Of a stretch of 64,000 nucleotides of DNA, positions 15,036 through 58,606 are shown in pieces. The notes below the pieces were generated by a model. It searched no databases. It was not told the origin of the DNA and worked only from the letters and a program-made list of their open reading frames with translations. The number at the start of each line of letters is the position of its first letter. The first letter of the stretch is position 1. This DNA comes from Octopus sinensis (Eukaryota): positions 50,592,001 through 50,656,000 of the forward strand of contig NC_043005.1 in NCBI RefSeq assembly GCF_006345805.1, given 5' to 3'. A program made the position numbers and the translations under genes.

Positions 15036-15486
15036 TTCGGGGTCGATGAAGTAAGTACCAGTTACGCACTGGGGTCGATGTAATCGACTATCCCCATCCG
15101 CCAAAAATTTATAACAGAAAGGATTATTATTGTAAGGAAAAAGAAATGAGAATGACAGAAGGCAAAGAATAATCTAAACCCAGAGTAAATGTACAAACGT
15201 TAACATTACGTGAAAGCATGTGACGTAGAGTTTATGGTGTTGAGCGTACTTGTTGCAAAGTGTCAATGGACAATCCTTGCTATATCTCTTATATTCATTT
15301 GGGGCTAGTGGCATGCATTGACTAGTAATATGCCATACTGTTTCACTATTTTGTCCACAAATTCTGCACTTATCACTTTCTGCGCTGTGTATTTGATGTA
15401 ATTGGTTCTTAATGCTTGCTCTTGGGCAGCACAGATTAGAACACTCCGTTTTCGGTTTGAAATCACTTTCAGTTATCTATAGCCAT

Positions 15487-15901: not shown

Positions 15902-17378
15902 TGTTTTTTTTTTATATCATACTTTCACTTCACTACCGAGCGCAGCTCTGTGTGCCTTGGGTATGTGCTGTGTTTTGTTGTGATGCTCTGATGGTTACTG
16001 TATTGAAAGTGTTTTGCGTAGGATGTGTGCAGTGCCCAGTAGTGCAATTTTCTGTATGTTATATGTGTTTGTAAGTCCTTGTGTTTTTGTTATGTATTTG
16101 TCTGAATATTTTTTATCATGCCTAATGCACCTACTATGATAGGAATTGTTTCTGTTTTTAGATTCCACATTCAAATTACCTCTATTTCCAGGTCTTTGTA
16201 TTTTGAAAGTTTCTCCATTTCTTTTAGAGACACGTTGTCATCTGCTGGTATTGATACATCAATTAGAAAACATTTTTTCCTTCATGATCTCTGACAACTA
16301 TATCTGGTCTGTTGGTCTTAATTTCTCTATCTGTGTGTATTGGCATATCACAGAGCATGGTTGCTTTCTCGTTTTCTGTGACCTTTTCTGGGGTGTGCCT
16401 ATACCATCTTTTTTCTGTTGCTATACCATAATGTTGGTATAGCTTCCAGTGTATGAAGGTCTCAACTCTGTCGTGTCTGTGAATATATTCCTTCTTAGCC
16501 AGGACTGGGCAGCCAGAGATAATATGATTTATTGTTTCTTGTCCATTTCCACATATTCTGCAGTTACTTGTTATATTTCTTTTCATTATATGTGTTTGGT
16601 AATTTCTGGTGGGGAGGCTTTGGTCTTGTGCTGCAATTAAAAATCCCTCTGTCTCCGCTTTGAGTCCAGGGCTTCTCAACCATTGCTGGGGTTTTTCTTT
16701 TGTCTATTTCTTTTATTTTTGTCCAGTATTTGCTATGAAGAGGCTTTTCTTGCCATCCTTTTATCATGGTCCATTGCTGTTCTAGTTTTAGTTTGGATTT
16801 CATTTGTTTTATAGCTTTTGTTGTTTCTTCATCATCTTCTTCTTCATCATCATCTTCTTCTTCTTCTTCTTCTTCTTCTTCATTAGGTGGTATGATTTCT
16901 TGTTTGTATTTGTCAGCTTCCTTAAATACTGAGAAAAGTTTTTGTTTTGCTCGTGTTTTGCCGCTATTTGATCAGTTTTCCTTCCTTCTGAAGTGGATTT
17001 TTTGCAGTCTTATGGTGGTTATTTTATAATAGTTTTCCAGCTGCACAAGGTCTCCACCACCTTCTATACGTTGTATATATAGCCTTTCTATGTCAGATTT
17101 TGGGTGATGCATCCTAGAACCTGTCATTATTTTTCTTGTTTTCCAATCTATTTTGGTTAGTTCATTTCGTGTCCAGTTAAGGATATTGTAGCTGTAACTT
17201 ATAACTGGGACAGCTAAAGTGTTAATACCTATTCTCTTGTTTTTAGCATTGAGCGCTGTTTTTAGTATTGATCTAATTCGTCTATAATATTCTTTTTATA
17301 TTTTCTCTTTCATTTGTGTGTGTTGTGTCTTATCTAGTTCATGGATTCCTAAATATTTGTAAGTTTGGCTTTGGTCTA

Positions 17379-42710: not shown

Positions 42711-43921
42711 TACAAGTGTCGGCTGAAAGGTTCTTACGCTGACCAAGATACTCTTATGGAAGGTGACCAAACGAGGTTTATTTTTCAACAGAATCTTCCT
42801 TACGGTTCACACACGGTGTTGCCATGCTTGGATCTAATTGGTGAACTAGCTTTCATCCTGTAGATAAAAAAATGTCATCAACAGTAGATATGATGTTATC
42901 ACCATTGCGATACTAGTTCCCAGCCAAGTGTTTTTCGTGTTGAGGAACTGATGGTAGTCAGATGGAGCCAAATGAGGTGAACAGGTGTAGTGGTCAACCA
43001 CTTTAAAGCCACGGTCACGCATAGCAGCCATTGAAACGAAGGAGTTGTGTGCTGCAGCCTTGTCCTGACGAAACAAGACCACTTCCGTTAGTTTTCCTGG
43101 GCGTTTGGTCTTAATAGCCTTTCGTAACTGCTTCTACAAGATGGCATAGTATTCTCCATTGACAATGTGGCCCTTTTGAAGTTAGAGATGTCTCTTGCAT
43201 CCCCCAAAACGGAGGCCTTTTCTGCAGGCGAAACTACGTTGGCCTTTTTTGGAGTTGATGAGGAGTGGTTGCTTCCACTGCATGGACTGTCTCATATTCT
43301 CCGGCTCAAAGTGATGAATCCAACACCCAATACCCAATAACCAGCTGAATCTGCCTCAAATAATGTCAGATCGCGTATTAGAAGATGTAGTACCCACCGA
43401 GCAGAAACCTTCGTCATGCCAAGTTCACTGTGCAAAATATTCTCAATTCTCTCACGGGGTATACTAATAGCATTGGTTATTTGATGTATAATCAATCGCC
43501 TGTCATTCATTGTCATGTGGTGAACATGATCAATGTTTTCCTTGGTGGTGGCAATTGCAGGACGTCCAAACCTTGGGTAATTTTTACATACACCCTATCT
43601 TTAAGTCACTCCCTTTTACTGTTGATAAAGCTGAAGCATCATCCCCTAATGTAGCAACCACGTCAGCACGAATGTCTTTATGGGCCAAACCCCTTTTCTT
43701 CAGGTACTTGATGATACCGCGATACCAAATTTTGTCCATTTTCAAGAGAATTTGCTACTAGTTATTTTTTAAGTCTTCTTTGAACAGTCAGATATGAGTT
43801 TACCTGGAAAGAGACAATGCAGTGGGTAATAAGAAAGGCTGAAACTAATGCATACAAGTTTTTACAGCTCAGGTATCACTCCTTCATAATCAGCCATTGA
43901 ACTTTTCAGCCCACCTACTTA
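42711..43921 (-). mobile_element. Full-length decayed mariner element (about 1.2 kb, 32-bp imperfect TIRs)
   Basis: TIRs tacaagtgtcggctgaaaggttcttacgctga (42711-42742) and tcagccattgaacttttcagcccacctactta (43890-43921) bracket a transposase pseudogene. Confidence 0.93.
42778..43739 (-). pseudogene. Mariner (DD34D-type) transposase pseudogene
   Basis: MDKIWYRGIIKYLKKKGL..LGDDASALSTV; NDRRLIIHQI..LHSELGMTKVSARWV; QDKAAAH; CSPHLAPSDYH (YSPDLAPSDY); CVNRKEDSVEK*. Multiple frameshifts. Confidence 0.93.
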
Positions 43922-55841: not shown

Positions 55842-56442
55842 AATGTACAACTTTCTCTCTAGACGAAAATTCCGCCTGGTTTAAAATATCCCAGACAAGC
55901 CTTGTGTCACGCTAAAGAACCAAGCCGATTCTACGACTTTATTGGGAGACGAGAATTCAAGGCAATCTATTTAGCTATCGACATGTAGGGAGGTGTTTAT
56001 CCATTCGTGAAAAATGGTCCAGTTCACCATTTTGACTGCAAAACCTAGATTACTCTCCGAACTGCAGGGCTTTATTATTAAAGTGCGCATGGTTTATGGT
56101 GAGCCATTCGCACGCTTTCGTCGTTCAGACTTGTACTGACCTGGTGCGGCAAATGCTATAACCCTAGTAGTTATGAAGCTGAAGGATTTCAATGGTGTTA
56201 TCTCCACTTAGATGAGCAACTTAAAAGCCGAAGAGATTCATCTGCTCTAGGTGCATTGGAGTACCTATGAGAGACCTGCTTCCGGAAGCAATTCCATGAC
56301 ATGCTAATTGACTCATATTTGCGACCCTGACTGGAACTACAAGTCTGGGTCAGAGTAGGTACCACACTCCTCGAAATGTTGGAACACCCGAATACACTAC
56401 CGGAAACAGTTACAGTTATAACTATGAAAAAGAGCTATTATT

Positions 56443-56799
56443 GTAACGATATAGAAGACAGAAGACAGCACGCCGGAGTGTTCACTGTTGATGATGTAAT
56501 ATATAGATATACAAGCCTAACTCGCACAACGAACGAACTTTGTAATTAAAGTTTGATGCTATCATAGTAACGATATAAAAGATAGAGAAGATAGCACGCC
56601 CGAGTGTTCAGCTGTCGCCGATGTATACAGATATACAAGGCTAACTCGCACAACGAACGATCTCTTTTAAATAAAGTTTGATGCTATCATAGTAACGATA
56701 TAAAAGACAGAGAAGACAGCACGGCTAAGTGTTAAGCTGTTACTGATGTAAACAGATACACAAGGCTAACTCGCACAACGAACAAACTCTTAAAGTTTG
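56443..56799. repeat. Three-copy tandem repeat, unit 124-125 bp
   Basis: gtaacgatata at 56443, 56567 and 56692; ctaactcgcacaacgaac is invariant in all three copies. Confidence 0.95.
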
Positions 56800-57485
56800 T
56801 AAAGCAATGTCATTCGTGCTATAGGAAATAAATCTAATGGACTCCGCAGTTAGTGTATAAGAGTTGTTCTTGTAGCAGCAATGTGTCTCCTGAGATATAA
56901 TCTGTTGATTTTTAACAGCCTCAGGTTCGGCTTCGGTCAAGTGCAATGCATTAGGGAGACTTGAATGAAAGTACACATTTGTGTGTGTGTATATATGTGT
57001 GTGCATGTGTGTGCGTGCATGTGTGTGTTTGTATTCATATGTGTGTGTATATAAATGTGTTTGTGTATGTGTATATATATATATATATATATAGATAGAT
57101 AGATAGATAGATAGACAGATAGATAGATACATACATACATACATACATATATGTATGTATATTAATGTATGTATGCATGCATACATGTATGGTAACAGGT
57201 ATGTTTGTATATCCTTATGTATATACATTTATATCTGCGTGTACGTGAAATTATGTGTATGTATATGTGTGAGTGAATGGGTTGTCCTCTTTTTCTATCT
57301 CTCTCTCCCTTACCCTCTCCCTCTTACACGCACATAAACACAAAATTCTTTGGGTGGTAAGTGGCGGTATCCTTCCGGCACACACAACGAAATTTTCGCG
57401 TCGATGGGTAACATCATTTCCCGGCTGTTATGCCTACAGTACGGATGTGTAGTGCACACAAGATGACCGAATGCATCGAACAGAG

Positions 57486-57566
57486 ACCATAAGCCCATGT
57501 CTCATCACCAGTGACGATGGTCTTCGTGAATTCTGGGTTGTGGCTTGCACAGTCCAGCATGTCTTG
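57486..57566 (-). pseudogene. Isolated 81-bp mariner transposase fragment around the first catalytic Asp
   Basis: QDMLDCASHNPEFTKTIVTGDETWAYG (mariner ITGDETW motif); open frame, no TIRs nearby. Confidence 0.85.
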
Positions 57567-57866
57567 GGGTCATGTTCATGCGGAATTGCTTCTGCTGCTA
57601 CTGTTGCTGTTGCTGTTGCTGCTGTTGAGCGAACTGTCTTCGTCCCTATAGTGGGAGAAGTCTGAAACGTGGTCCTTTGCTATTCGTAAGACCTGCAGAA
57701 GAGAAAGCAGGCCAACCCCGACACCGAGAGCATCGACGGATGGATGAATGCGCATCCAGGATCAGCGGTTGCGTAGGAAGTCGGGGACAAGAAACAGGAA
57801 GAAAGAGTGAGAGAAAGTTGGAGCGAAAGAGTACAACAGGGGTCGCCACCGACGAGCTCGCATTAC

Positions 57867-58003
57867 ACGTCCGTAATGTAAGCGTATAAGCCGGGAACTG
57901 AAGCGGCTTACCGGCGCAAAAGCTTTTATATGTGCACGGAAAGGATGGGGCCATCTACCACTTAAAGGATTTTACCCAAGTAACATTAGTTTTGGCGGGA
58001 AAA
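57867..58003 (-). promoter_or_regulatory. Pol II core promoter: TATA + Inr + DPE, with upstream E2F site; predicted TSS 57899
   Basis: On the minus strand TATAAAAG starts at 57930 (-31), TCA(+1)GTT lies at 57901-57896, and GGACGT lies at +28..+33 (57872-57867). TTTTGGCGGGAAAA occupies 57990-58003. The region is locally GC/CpG-rich. Confidence 0.7.
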
Positions 58004-58297
58004 TAAAAGGCGTATACTTTTTGACGGCACCTCGTTTATATACATACAAACACATATATATACATGCATACACACACACACATATATATATATTTACATA
58101 AATAAGGATAAGATCGTTATTTAAATTAACGATTTTATCAGGTGGCTAGCATGGGAATAAAAACCTCAAAGGTAATAATTATTATTAAAATTATAATTAA
58201 AGGTATCTAAATGAACATTTAATGTGGTTTTAGAGTCAAGTTTTGGCTGCTATATCTAGCATGGTGGTATCTTTTAGATACCTTTAATTATAATTTT

Positions 58298-58379
<82 letters not shown>

Positions 58380-58487
58380 CATATATATATACACGTATAT
58401 GTATACGTACATGTATACATACATGCACACATACGAGTGTGCTTTGGGGATATGTATATACATGCTGTCAAATACACGTTTATATTT

Positions 58488-58606
<119 letters not shown>

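What the first reader, a model, noticed from the sequence alone, without database searches (positions are those of the whole stretch)
57867..58003. Textbook TATA-Inr-DPE core promoter with an E2F site, in a region with no annotated-looking gene
Seen: on the minus strand TATAAAAG begins exactly 31 nt upstream of the A in TCAGTT (57899), and GGACGT sits exactly at +28..+33. A double-sided E2F site TTTTGGCGGGAAAA lies about 92-104 nt upstream. Known: these are the canonical positions of the TATA box, the invertebrate initiator TCAGTY and the DPE (RGWYV, +28..+32); TATA and DPE together are uncommon in natural promoters. Inference: three position-locked motifs plus an E2F site argue for a real, possibly cell-cycle-regulated, focused promoter. 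It would drive an unannotated minus-strand transcript, either a lncRNA/sORF mRNA or the first exon of a gene whose introns span the window to the left.
Basis: partly seen in the sequence, partly recalled or inferred. Interest (0 to 1): 0.75.

Follow-up and report, generated by a model that had tools for sequence, protein, structure and literature searches.

The report
Dead mariner transposon's promoter end
The "textbook promoter" is the 5' end (terminal repeat plus leader) of a decayed, internally deleted mariner transposon found in several copies in octopus genomes, so it is an ordinary transposon relic and not the promoter of a hidden host gene.

Summary
The TATA+Inr+DPE triple is expected 0.03-0.06 times per 64-kb window. 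That is unusual for one window but not for a genome scan.

The segment is not unique DNA. Bases 58034-57859 have an inverted copy at 57308-57465. Between the two arms lies a 27-codon mariner transposase fragment. The same arms, and the same deletion junction, occur in paralogous copies in Octopus bimaculoides, O. sinensis and in unidentified sequencing runs.

In full-length (~1.3 kb) relatives, the arm sequence is the 5' terminal inverted repeat plus the 5' leader, ending just before the transposase start codon.

The Inr-like, DPE-like and E2F-like motifs belong to the consensus of the deleted family. The TATA box is private to this copy (consensus GCGTG became ATATA) and is absent from the 8 other arms aligned.

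Downstream I found only filler, the dead transposase fragment and microsatellites, and no host exon.

Mariner promoters are known to lie in the 5' repeat plus leader, so this is probably a relic transposon promoter. Interest is low.

The parts
57308..58034 (-). Whole element: a decayed, internally deleted (non-autonomous) mariner-like transposon, about 727 bp, in minus-strand orientation. Its 3' terminus is truncated.
   Evidence: nhmmer with arm profiles places arm A at 58039-57846 and arm B at 57308-57465. blastn to L001 covers the arms, the transposase fragment and the junction. The block is GC-rich (~0.5) and lies between microsatellites.
58002..58034 (-). 5' terminal inverted repeat (CGAGGTGCCGTCAAAAAGTATACGCC...). 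The flanking dinucleotide is AA here, where relatives have TA.
   Evidence: It occurs once in the window. Only these ~33-36 nt are repeated in inverted form at the 3' ends of full-length relatives L008-L013. Alignments A4 and A5.
57859..58034 (-). Arm A: the 5' inverted repeat plus the 5' leader of the mariner.
   Evidence: It is homologous over its whole length to the 5' ~190 nt of full-length elements L011 (E 2.7e-16), L012 (1.2e-23) and L009, and to both arms of L001 and L003 and the 3' arm of L002.
57990..58003 (-). E2F-like palindrome TTTTCCCGCCAAAA, just inside the terminal repeat.
   Evidence: It is consensus in the deleted octopus family: L001_5 TTTTCCTGCCAAAA, L001_3 TTTCTCGCCAAAA, L003_5 ATTTC-CGCCAAAA. 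It is absent from L011.
57923..57930 (-). TATAAAAG at -31. It is private to this copy.
   Evidence: None of the 8 other arms has TATAWA in these columns. The consensus is GCGTGAAAATTTTCGCG (A5).
57896..57901 (-). Inr-like TCAGTT (A at 57899), 136 nt from the element's 5' end.
   Evidence: Other arms read TCAGTT (L001_5, L001_3), TCAG-T (L002_3), TCATTT (arm B), TCCGTT (L003_3) and TCAGAT (L011, 138 nt from its end).
57867..57872 (-). DPE-like GGACGT at +28..+33.
   Evidence: The family consensus is nGACG at +28..+32. Arm B has GGATG, L002_3 AGACA, L011 AGACA and L012 AGTCG.
57597..57852 (-). 256 nt with no detectable homology to the internal part of any relative. It is filler or a replacement, and it includes a CAG/CAA run.
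   Evidence: Smith-Waterman scores against the interiors of L001, L002, L003, L009 and L011 fall within the shuffle range. tblastn found no transposase match here.
57486..57566 (-). Transposase fragment QDMLDCASHNPEFTKTIVTGDETWAYG, equal to residues ~138-164 of full-length relatives. It lies at the entry to the Transposase_1 (PF01359) domain.
   Evidence: tblastn: 74-78% identity, E about 1e-10, to P0047, P0049 and P0050. The HMMER search of 1.84 billion proteins gave 40 hits. The longer hits carry PF01359 and PF17906.
57308..57486 (+). Arm B: an inverted copy of the 5' leader plus the first 8 transposase codons (ATGACCGAATGCATCGAACAGAGA = MTECIEQR, 57463-57486 on the + strand). It is fused head-on to the fragment above, and its outer ~32 nt (the terminal repeat) are missing. 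It carries a mirror Inr+DPE pair (TCATTT with A at 57416, then GGATG).
   Evidence: score 97 against a shuffle mean of 30.4, sd 4.4. nhmmer. Mirror motif pair. Start-codon region compared with L009 and L011 (read by eye).

Best explanation
The motif cluster lies in the 5' terminal inverted repeat plus 5' leader of a dead, non-autonomous mariner (Tc1/mariner superfamily) transposon.

Shown: the ancestor of this copy was a deletion derivative. In it, the transposase ORF is cut after codon ~164 (...TGDETWxYG) and fused to an inverted duplicate of the element's own 5' end (terminal repeat, leader and first 8 codons). This gives arms of about 190-225 nt. Copies with the same junction occur in several octopus genomes.

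Shown: the Inr-like TCAGTT, the DPE-like GACG at +28 and the E2F-like TTTTCCCGCCAAAA are family-consensus sequence inherited by descent. The TATA box at -31 arose in this copy alone, by transitions in GCGTG.

Inferred: in the autonomous parent, this leader region carried the transposase gene's promoter, as in Mos1, Hsmar1 and Bari3. The Inr-like element sits 48-87 nt upstream of the conserved start codon (MTERIEQR / MSERIEQR) in relatives and in arm B. It may therefore mark the element's own transcription start. In this copy any such transcription would be non-productive, because a stop follows after 33 codons and then come filler and a transposase fragment.

No host gene is involved.
For: Inverted copy of 57860-57973 at 57342-57455: (z about 15).

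Transposase fragment between the arms: 40 hits in 1.84 billion proteins, best 5e-9. The longer hits carry PF01359 Transposase_1 and PF17906 HTH_48. tblastn gave 74-78% identity.

Shared deletion junction: P0001, P0002, P0006 and P0038 share 'YG|LCSMRSVIL' with the window. P0001 and P0002 are named as O. bimaculoides and O. sinensis loci.

Arms elsewhere: loci L001-L007 contain homologous arms. L001 and L003 show both arms, L002 only its 3' arm.

Full-length elements: L009-L013 are ~1.05-1.36 kb and show only a ~33-nt terminal repeat at the 3' end. In L009-L012 the 5' ~130-190 nt match arm A; in L013 only ~40 nt do.

Motif table across 9-10 arms.

Start codon 70-86 nt downstream of the Inr-equivalent position in L011 and L009.

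Literature: the Mos1 and Hsmar1 promoters are the 5' ITR plus 5' UTR and are active in reporter assays (PMC4777549). Tc1-mariner elements carry their promoter in the left terminus, and the Bari3 left TIR has promoter activity (PMC4120734).
Against: No expression data exist here, so promoter activity is untested for the family consensus and for this copy.

The Inr-like motif is absent from the more distant full-length relative L012 and is shifted in L009 and L010. It may be fortuitous even within the family.

Only about 5 independent deletion-type copies and about 5 full-length relatives were examined, so the consensus is thin and the copy number in any genome is unknown.

The TA target duplication cannot be shown at this copy: the 5' flank reads AA and the 3' end is truncated.

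The 256-nt middle segment is unexplained.

The source species of the window was not identified.
Confidence: 0.87

Rival explanations
1. Host promoter. The cluster is a working focused TATA-Inr-DPE promoter with E2F input. It drives an unannotated minus-strand lncRNA, a small-ORF mRNA or the first exon of a host gene. It could have been co-opted from the transposon relic after the TATA box was gained.
For: All three core motifs are at canonical spacing, with an E2F-like site upstream. The triple is rare by chance within one window. The copy-specific gain of TATA at exactly -31 would strengthen a pre-existing Inr+DPE. NCBI gives related copies gene models: LOC106870244 and LOC115216301.
Against: Three of the four motifs are inherited transposon consensus, and the mirror arm carries the same Inr+DPE pair pointing the other way. 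The TATA arose by transitions typical of neutral decay. The downstream ORF stops after 33 codons. What follows is filler, a dead transposase fragment, the inverted arm and microsatellites. None of ten minus-strand ORFs tested between 48.9 and 57.95 kb reached a Pfam family's curated threshold. The translated segment found no homologue in the 5.8-billion protein search. The finding was selected by scanning for exactly this motif set.
Confidence: 0.06
2. Pure coincidence at every level. The real promoter of this mariner family lies elsewhere in the leader, or depends on read-through from flanking DNA. On this view, the Inr-like and DPE-like matches in the family consensus are chance matches to short degenerate motifs.
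For: RGWYV matches about 2% of positions and TCAKTY about 200 sites in this window. The Inr-like motif is not kept in L012, and only loosely in L009 and L010. The motif columns do not stand out in conservation from the rest of the arm (A2 mean column identity 68%, read by eye). The TCAGTY and DPE definitions come from Drosophila and have not been validated in cephalopods (my own knowledge).
Against: The position and orientation fit: sense strand, about 137 nt from the element's end, and 48-87 nt upstream of the conserved start codon. Reporter assays place mariner promoters in this same interval for Mos1, Hsmar1 and Bari3 (PMC4777549, PMC4120734).
Confidence: 0.35
3. Hairpin RNA source. The two inverted arms, transcribed through from either side, fold into a long hairpin that feeds a small-RNA (endo-siRNA or piRNA) pathway against this mariner family.
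For: Inverted arms of about 115-160 nt, separated by about 400 nt.
Against: The arms are only about 72% identical and contain indels, so any duplex would be poor. There are no small-RNA data. This architecture is simply how the deletion family is built in all the copies examined.
Confidence: 0.03

Closest known systems
Mos1 and Hsmar1 mariner promoters (5' ITR + 5' UTR)
   Same: The location in the element is the same: the interval from the terminal repeat to the transposase start codon. In Mos1 and Hsmar1 this interval has measured promoter activity (PMC4777549). The transposase fragment here hits proteins with the Mos1-type Pfam domains PF01359 and PF17906.
   Different: No activity was measured here. 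The leader is about 210 nt in full-length relatives. The sequence is unrelated to Mos1 or Hsmar1 beyond the general layout of the terminal repeat. This copy cannot encode a transposase.
Bari3 (Tc1-like, long terminal inverted repeats carrying the promoter)
   Same: The long inverted terminal arms include the promoter-bearing left terminus, so the same sequence is present at both ends (PMC4120734).
   Different: In Bari3 the long repeats belong to the autonomous element. Here the full-length relatives have only ~33-nt repeats. The long arms arose in a deletion derivative by inverted duplication of the 5' end.
Mariner-derived non-autonomous elements / MITEs (for example MADE1 from Hsmar1; from my own knowledge)
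   Same: It is an internally deleted derivative that keeps the termini, has no coding capacity, and occurs as several copies sharing one deletion junction.
   Different: It is larger (about 0.73-0.85 kb) than classic MITEs. It retains about 160 codons of ORF in better-preserved copies such as L001, and it has a fold-back 3' arm. Copy number is unknown.
Drosophila-type TATA/Inr/DPE focused core promoters, including Inr+DPE internal promoters of insect non-LTR retrotransposons (from my own knowledge)
   Same: The motif sequences and spacings match: TATA at -31, TCAGTT, and RGWYV at +28.
   Different: There is no transcription-start evidence. The organism is a cephalopod, where these consensus motifs are unvalidated. 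The TATA box is not shared by any homologous arm.

Membership tests
mariner (Tc1/mariner superfamily) transposon | Transposase of the Mos1 type (HTH_48 + Transposase_1 / DD34D catalytic domain) | tested here: met
   Only a 27-residue fragment survives (57566-57486). It matches residues ~138-164 of proteins carrying PF01359 and PF17906 at 74-78% identity, E about 1e-10. The catalytic triad itself is missing from this copy.
mariner (Tc1/mariner superfamily) transposon | Short terminal inverted repeats (~30 bp) at both ends | tested here: inconclusive
   The 5' repeat is present (58034-58002). It is homologous to both termini of L009-L013 and L001. The 3' terminal ~32 nt are missing from this copy (nhmmer profile positions 32-33 onward only).
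mariner (Tc1/mariner superfamily) transposon | TA target-site duplication | tested here: inconclusive
   The 5' flank reads AA rather than TA, and the 3' end is truncated. Relatives show TA directly before CGAGGT / CAAGAT (L009, L010, L011, L001_3, L003_3).
mariner (Tc1/mariner superfamily) transposon | Full length of about 1.3 kb with a single ORF | tested here: not met
   This copy is about 727 bp and has no intact ORF. It is a deletion derivative. Full-length relatives with homologous ends are ~1.05-1.36 kb (L009-L013).
non-autonomous deletion derivative (MITE-like family) | Several dispersed copies sharing the same internal deletion junction and termini | tested here: met
   The junction 'TGDETWxYG|LCSMRSVIL' occurs in the window, P0001 (O. 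bimaculoides), P0002 (O. sinensis), P0006 and P0038. Homologous arms occur in L001-L007. Copy number per genome was not measured.
focused TATA-Inr-DPE core promoter | TATA at about -31/-30, Inr TCAGTY at +1 and DPE RGWYV at +28..+32 | tested here: met
   Direct reading. It is the only such triple in the window.
focused TATA-Inr-DPE core promoter | Motifs and spacing kept in homologous sequences | tested here: not met
   The TATA box is absent from all 8 other arms. The Inr-like and DPE-like motifs are kept only within the octopus deletion family and L011, and they do not stand out from the arm's background conservation (by eye).
focused TATA-Inr-DPE core promoter | Sharp capped transcription start at the Inr A | not testable with these tools
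   No CAGE, RACE or RNA-seq data were available.
E2F-regulated promoter | TTTSSCGC site bound by E2F, with cell-cycle dependent expression | not testable with these tools
   The sequence match is present (58003-57990). It is consensus sequence of the deleted octopus family, next to the terminal repeat. Binding and regulation cannot be tested here.

The most novel reading that the evidence does not exclude
A dead mariner 5' end already carried Inr-like and DPE-like elements. By point mutation it gained a TATA box at exactly -31. On this reading it has been co-opted as a working focused promoter, perhaps E2F-responsive, for a lineage-specific octopus non-coding transcript. That would be a traceable, step-by-step birth of a three-element core promoter from transposon decay.
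Probability: 0.04. Interest if true: 0.4.

Novelty: new member of a known kind. Interest (0 to 1): 0.12.

Why it matters
The main value is as a caution. Position-locked core-promoter motifs found by eye in repeat-rich invertebrate genomes can be inherited transposon sequence plus one lucky mutation. They need a repeat check before being read as host promoters.

There is also a small positive point. This octopus mariner family has an Inr-like and +28 DPE-like pair in its leader, 48-87 nt upstream of the transposase start. That is a testable candidate for the element's own TATA-less promoter. The family also illustrates how a fold-back deletion derivative places the promoter-bearing end at both termini.

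Tried and rejected
Searches that returned nothing:
- Protein search with the 102-aa ORF spanning the motifs (57646-57954, minus strand): no homologue. Spurious-ORF copies could therefore not be used to count repeats.
- Word-indexed protein search with the 50-aa fragment containing X: no candidates. The index-free HMMER search succeeded instead.
- Pfam on three-frame minus-strand translations of 56700-58500: no hits, because the surviving fragment is too short.
- PDB sequence search with the fragment: no hits.
- Exact look-up of a LINE-like window ORF to identify the source genome: not on record. The species of the window stays unidentified. Only the relatives are named as Octopus.
- Search of the window for a second copy of the terminal repeat with up to 3 mismatches: only the one site.
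- Self-BLAST of 57400-58200 against the window: apart from microsatellites and short chance or low-complexity matches, only the inverted arm.
- Homology of the 256-nt middle segment to the interiors of relatives: none.
- Pfam on ten downstream minus-strand ORFs: nothing reached a family's curated threshold.

Ideas I dropped:
- I first thought the ATG at 57862-57860 was the ancestral start codon. The conserved start (MTERIEQR / MSERIEQR) lies further downstream in full-length relatives, and that ATG is not conserved.
- CpG-island reading: the block is GC-rich, but its CpG observed/expected ratio (0.9-1.2) is unremarkable for this window, and the top CpG windows are other repeats.
- P0003, a 3561-aa repetitive protein in the hit list, is spurious.

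Full report
**1. The observation**

On the minus strand:
- TATAAAAG occupies 57930-57923.
- TCAGTT occupies 57901-57896, with its A at 57899.
- GGACGT occupies 57872-57867, which is +28..+33.
- TTTTCCCGCCAAAA occupies 58003-57990, which is -104..-91.

I shuffled the window 300 times, preserving dinucleotide content. The combination TCAGTY + TATAWA at -34..-28 + RGWYV at +28 has a mean of 0.027 per window, or 0.06 with TCAKTY. The real window has exactly one such triple, this one. It is therefore unusual for a single window, but a motif-driven scan of a whole genome would be expected to find many by chance. TATA+Inr pairs in general are inflated here by (TA)n microsatellites (9 observed against 2.8 expected).

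**2. The segment is repeated DNA**

A self-comparison showed that 57860-57973 has a reverse-complement copy at 57342-57455, about 72% identical. The alignment score is 97, against a shuffle mean of 30.4 with sd 4.4.

The two arms, with what lies between them, form a GC-rich block (~0.5) of about 700 bp. The block is flanked on both sides by microsatellites.

Arm B carries the mirror-image motif pair on the + strand: TCATTT with A at 57416, and GGATG at +28. Two of the five Inr+DPE pairs in the whole window are therefore the two arms of one element.

**3. What lies between the arms**

The minus strand at 57566-57486 reads QDMLDCASHNPEFTKTIVTGDETWAYG.

- An index-free HMMER search of the 51-aa ORF against 1.84 billion representative proteins gave 40 hits at E <= 1e-3, the best at 5e-9.
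- The longer hits (P0009, P0010, P0011, P0018) carry Pfam PF01359 (Transposase_1, the mariner catalytic domain) and PF17906 (the HTH domain of Mos1 transposase). The matched stretch ends right at the start of PF01359.
- A local tblastn with full-length relatives gave 74-78% identity at E about 1e-10, and placed the fragment at residues ~138-164.

**4. A family with a shared deletion junction**

Four hits (P0001, P0002, P0006, P0038) continue past "YG" with "LCSMRSVIL", exactly as the window does. The full-type proteins continue with "YDPETKFQSSQW" instead.

P0001 is named "uncharacterized protein LOC106870244 [Octopus bimaculoides]". P0002 is named "LOC115216301 [Octopus sinensis]".

I fetched their loci:
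- L001 comes from GCA_001194135.2.
- L002 comes from GCA_006345805.1.
- L003-L007 come from Logan assemblies of the SRR118693xx runs.

L001 has a 5' arm (2712-2902) and an inverted 3' arm (3548-3388), both homologous to window arm A. L003 also has both arms, and L002 has its 3' arm.

Identities to the window are 68-86%. These are therefore paralogous copies of one family and not the same locus.

**5. What the arm is**

I fetched five full-type relatives: L009 and L010 (ERZ22157276), L011 (ERZ3058081), L012 (ERZ25067582) and L013. They are ~1.05-1.36 kb long.
- In L011, L012 and L009 the first ~190 nt match arm A over its whole length, with E values of 2.7e-16 (L011), 1.2e-23 (L012) and 5.7e-09 (L009). 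The match covers ~130 nt in L010 and only ~40 nt in L013.
- At their 3' ends only about 33 nt, the terminal inverted repeat, are repeated in inverted form.
- The conserved start codon (MSERIEQR or MTERIEQR) follows the arm. In L011 it is 208 nt from the element's end and 70 nt after the Inr-equivalent A. In L009 it is 218 nt from the end.

Arm A is therefore the 5' terminal repeat plus the 5' leader of a mariner.

In the octopus deletion family this whole 5' end was duplicated in inverted orientation and fused to codon ~164. The duplicated piece includes the first eight codons. On the window's + strand, 57463-57486 reads ATGACCGAATGCATCGAACAGAGA = MTECIEQR. "LCSMRSVIL" is simply the reverse-strand reading of those codons.

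**6. Motif by motif** (alignments A2, A4, A5)

- **E2F-like site.** TTTTCCCGCCAAAA is the consensus of the octopus deletion family. It is one or two substitutions away in L001_5, L001_3 and L003_5, and it is absent from L011.
- **TATA box.** The other eight arms read CACACAACGAAAT, CATGCGTGAAAAT, CATGTGCG-ATAT, CAGACCTGAAAAT, TAGGCGTGAAAAC, TATGCAAAAAGAT, CACGCTTAAAAAA and CATGCGTGGAAGT. None has TATAWA. The window's ATATA differs from the consensus GCGTG by three G>A changes and one C>T change. That is the pattern expected from neutral decay.
- **Inr-like motif.** TCAGTT is the consensus. L001 has it in both arms, L002_3 has TCAG-T, arm B has TCATTT, L003_3 has TCCGTT and L011 has TCAGAT. L012 has lost it, and L009 and L010 have a shifted TCATTY.
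- **DPE-like motif.** The consensus is nGACG at +28..+32, with CpG decay in several copies.

Three of the four motifs are thus inherited together from the transposon. The fourth, the one that made the promoter look "textbook", is an accident of this copy.

**7. How it most likely works**

Shown: the identity and anatomy set out above.

Established knowledge: a mariner must carry its own promoter between the 5' repeat and the start codon. For Mos1 and Hsmar1, the 5' ITR plus 5' UTR drives luciferase (PMC4777549). Bari3's left terminal repeat does the same (PMC4120734).

Inference: the Inr-like and +28 pair is on the sense strand, about 137 nt from the element's end and 48-87 nt upstream of the conserved ATG. 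It is a reasonable candidate for the family's own TATA-less start site. This step is untested and could still be coincidence. I give that rival about 0.35 within the transposon framework.

In this copy, transcription from 57899 would produce:
- a 33-codon ORF starting at the ATG at 57862;
- then 256 nt with no homology to any relative;
- then the dead transposase fragment;
- then the inverted arm.

None of the ten tested minus-strand ORFs down to 48.9 kb reaches a Pfam family's curated threshold.

**8. Comparison with known systems, and novelty**

This is a non-autonomous mariner derivative. Both that kind of element and the promoter function of a mariner's 5' end are well known.

Tc1-Mariner elements are an abundant class in octopus repeat annotations. 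One study lists 73 families in O. vulgaris (PMC13282606), and they belong to the ancient coleoid repeat set (PMC8967140).

The fold-back architecture and the possible Inr+DPE leader are small details of a new member of a known kind.

The only reading with some novelty is that the copy-specific TATA gain turned the relic into a working host promoter. The evidence does not exclude it, but it has no positive support. I give it about 4%.

**9. Limits**

- The species of the window was not identified, though its repeat content resembles octopus.
- Copy number per genome was not measured.
- The consensus rests on about ten arms.
- No expression data were available.

Noticed in passing
window 42717-43920 (minus strand): A second, different mariner remnant of about 1.2 kb. 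It has an N-terminal HTH-like ORF (MDKIWYRGIIKYLKKRGL...), degenerate catalytic-domain pieces and TA-flanked termini (GTAGGTGGGCTGAAAAGTTC... / ...rc TACAAGTGTCGGCTGAAAGGTTC). It is only about 35% identical in protein to the family studied here.
   Followed up: partly
window 57597-57852: 256 nt inside the element, between arm A and the transposase fragment, with no detectable homology to the interior of any relative. It contains a CT-rich stretch and a CAG/CAA run. Its origin is unknown; it could be filler DNA from repair or a nested fragment.
   Followed up: partly
window 56434-56791: A tandem repeat with a 125-nt unit, 2.9 copies and 85% matches (TRF score 496), about 500 nt beyond the truncated end of the element.
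   Followed up: no
window 58185-58214 / 58270-58299: A near-perfect 30-nt inverted repeat (97% complementary) with a 55-nt spacer. It looks like a MITE or hairpin, is AT-rich, and lies about 150 nt outside the mariner's 5' end.
   Followed up: no
window ~6.4, 8.3, 8.5, 52.0, 62.2 kb; and ~1.8, 48.7, 53.5, 63.7 kb: Two families of short dispersed repeats recur on both strands. They show up through recurring translations (TQRGQTRTDKRIKSITSTPVRNWYL... and PEAIVEDTCPRCHAVRLNPK...). They are probably SINEs, and they account for the windows richest in CpG.
   Followed up: no
window 15177-15476 and 16266-16703 (minus strand): ORFs resembling the C-terminal end of a non-LTR retrotransposon protein (CRICG...ETxxHIxSxC motif). 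The exact sequence is not on record in the gene-position index.
   Followed up: partly
L001 3001-3423; L002 2001-2459: NCBI annotation calls ORFs inside dead copies of this deletion family 'uncharacterized protein' genes (LOC106870244 in O. bimaculoides, LOC115216301 in O. sinensis). These are likely transposon-derived gene-model artefacts, or a sign that some copies are transcribed.
   Followed up: no
L011 (ERZ3058081, 'Meta.Cpag...'), L009/L010/L013 (ERZ22157276), L008/L012 (ERZ25067582): Full-length relatives whose termini and 5' leaders can still be aligned to the window's occur in ENA assemblies of unidentified organisms. Close protein relatives are named from decapod crustaceans (GVQW3-like, Macrobrachium and Palaemon). 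This fits the wide, possibly horizontal, spread typical of mariners.
   Followed up: no
L008 507-2223: Two piggyBac-type ORFs (PF13843) lie directly upstream of the mariner fragment in that locus, which suggests nested transposon insertions.
   Followed up: no
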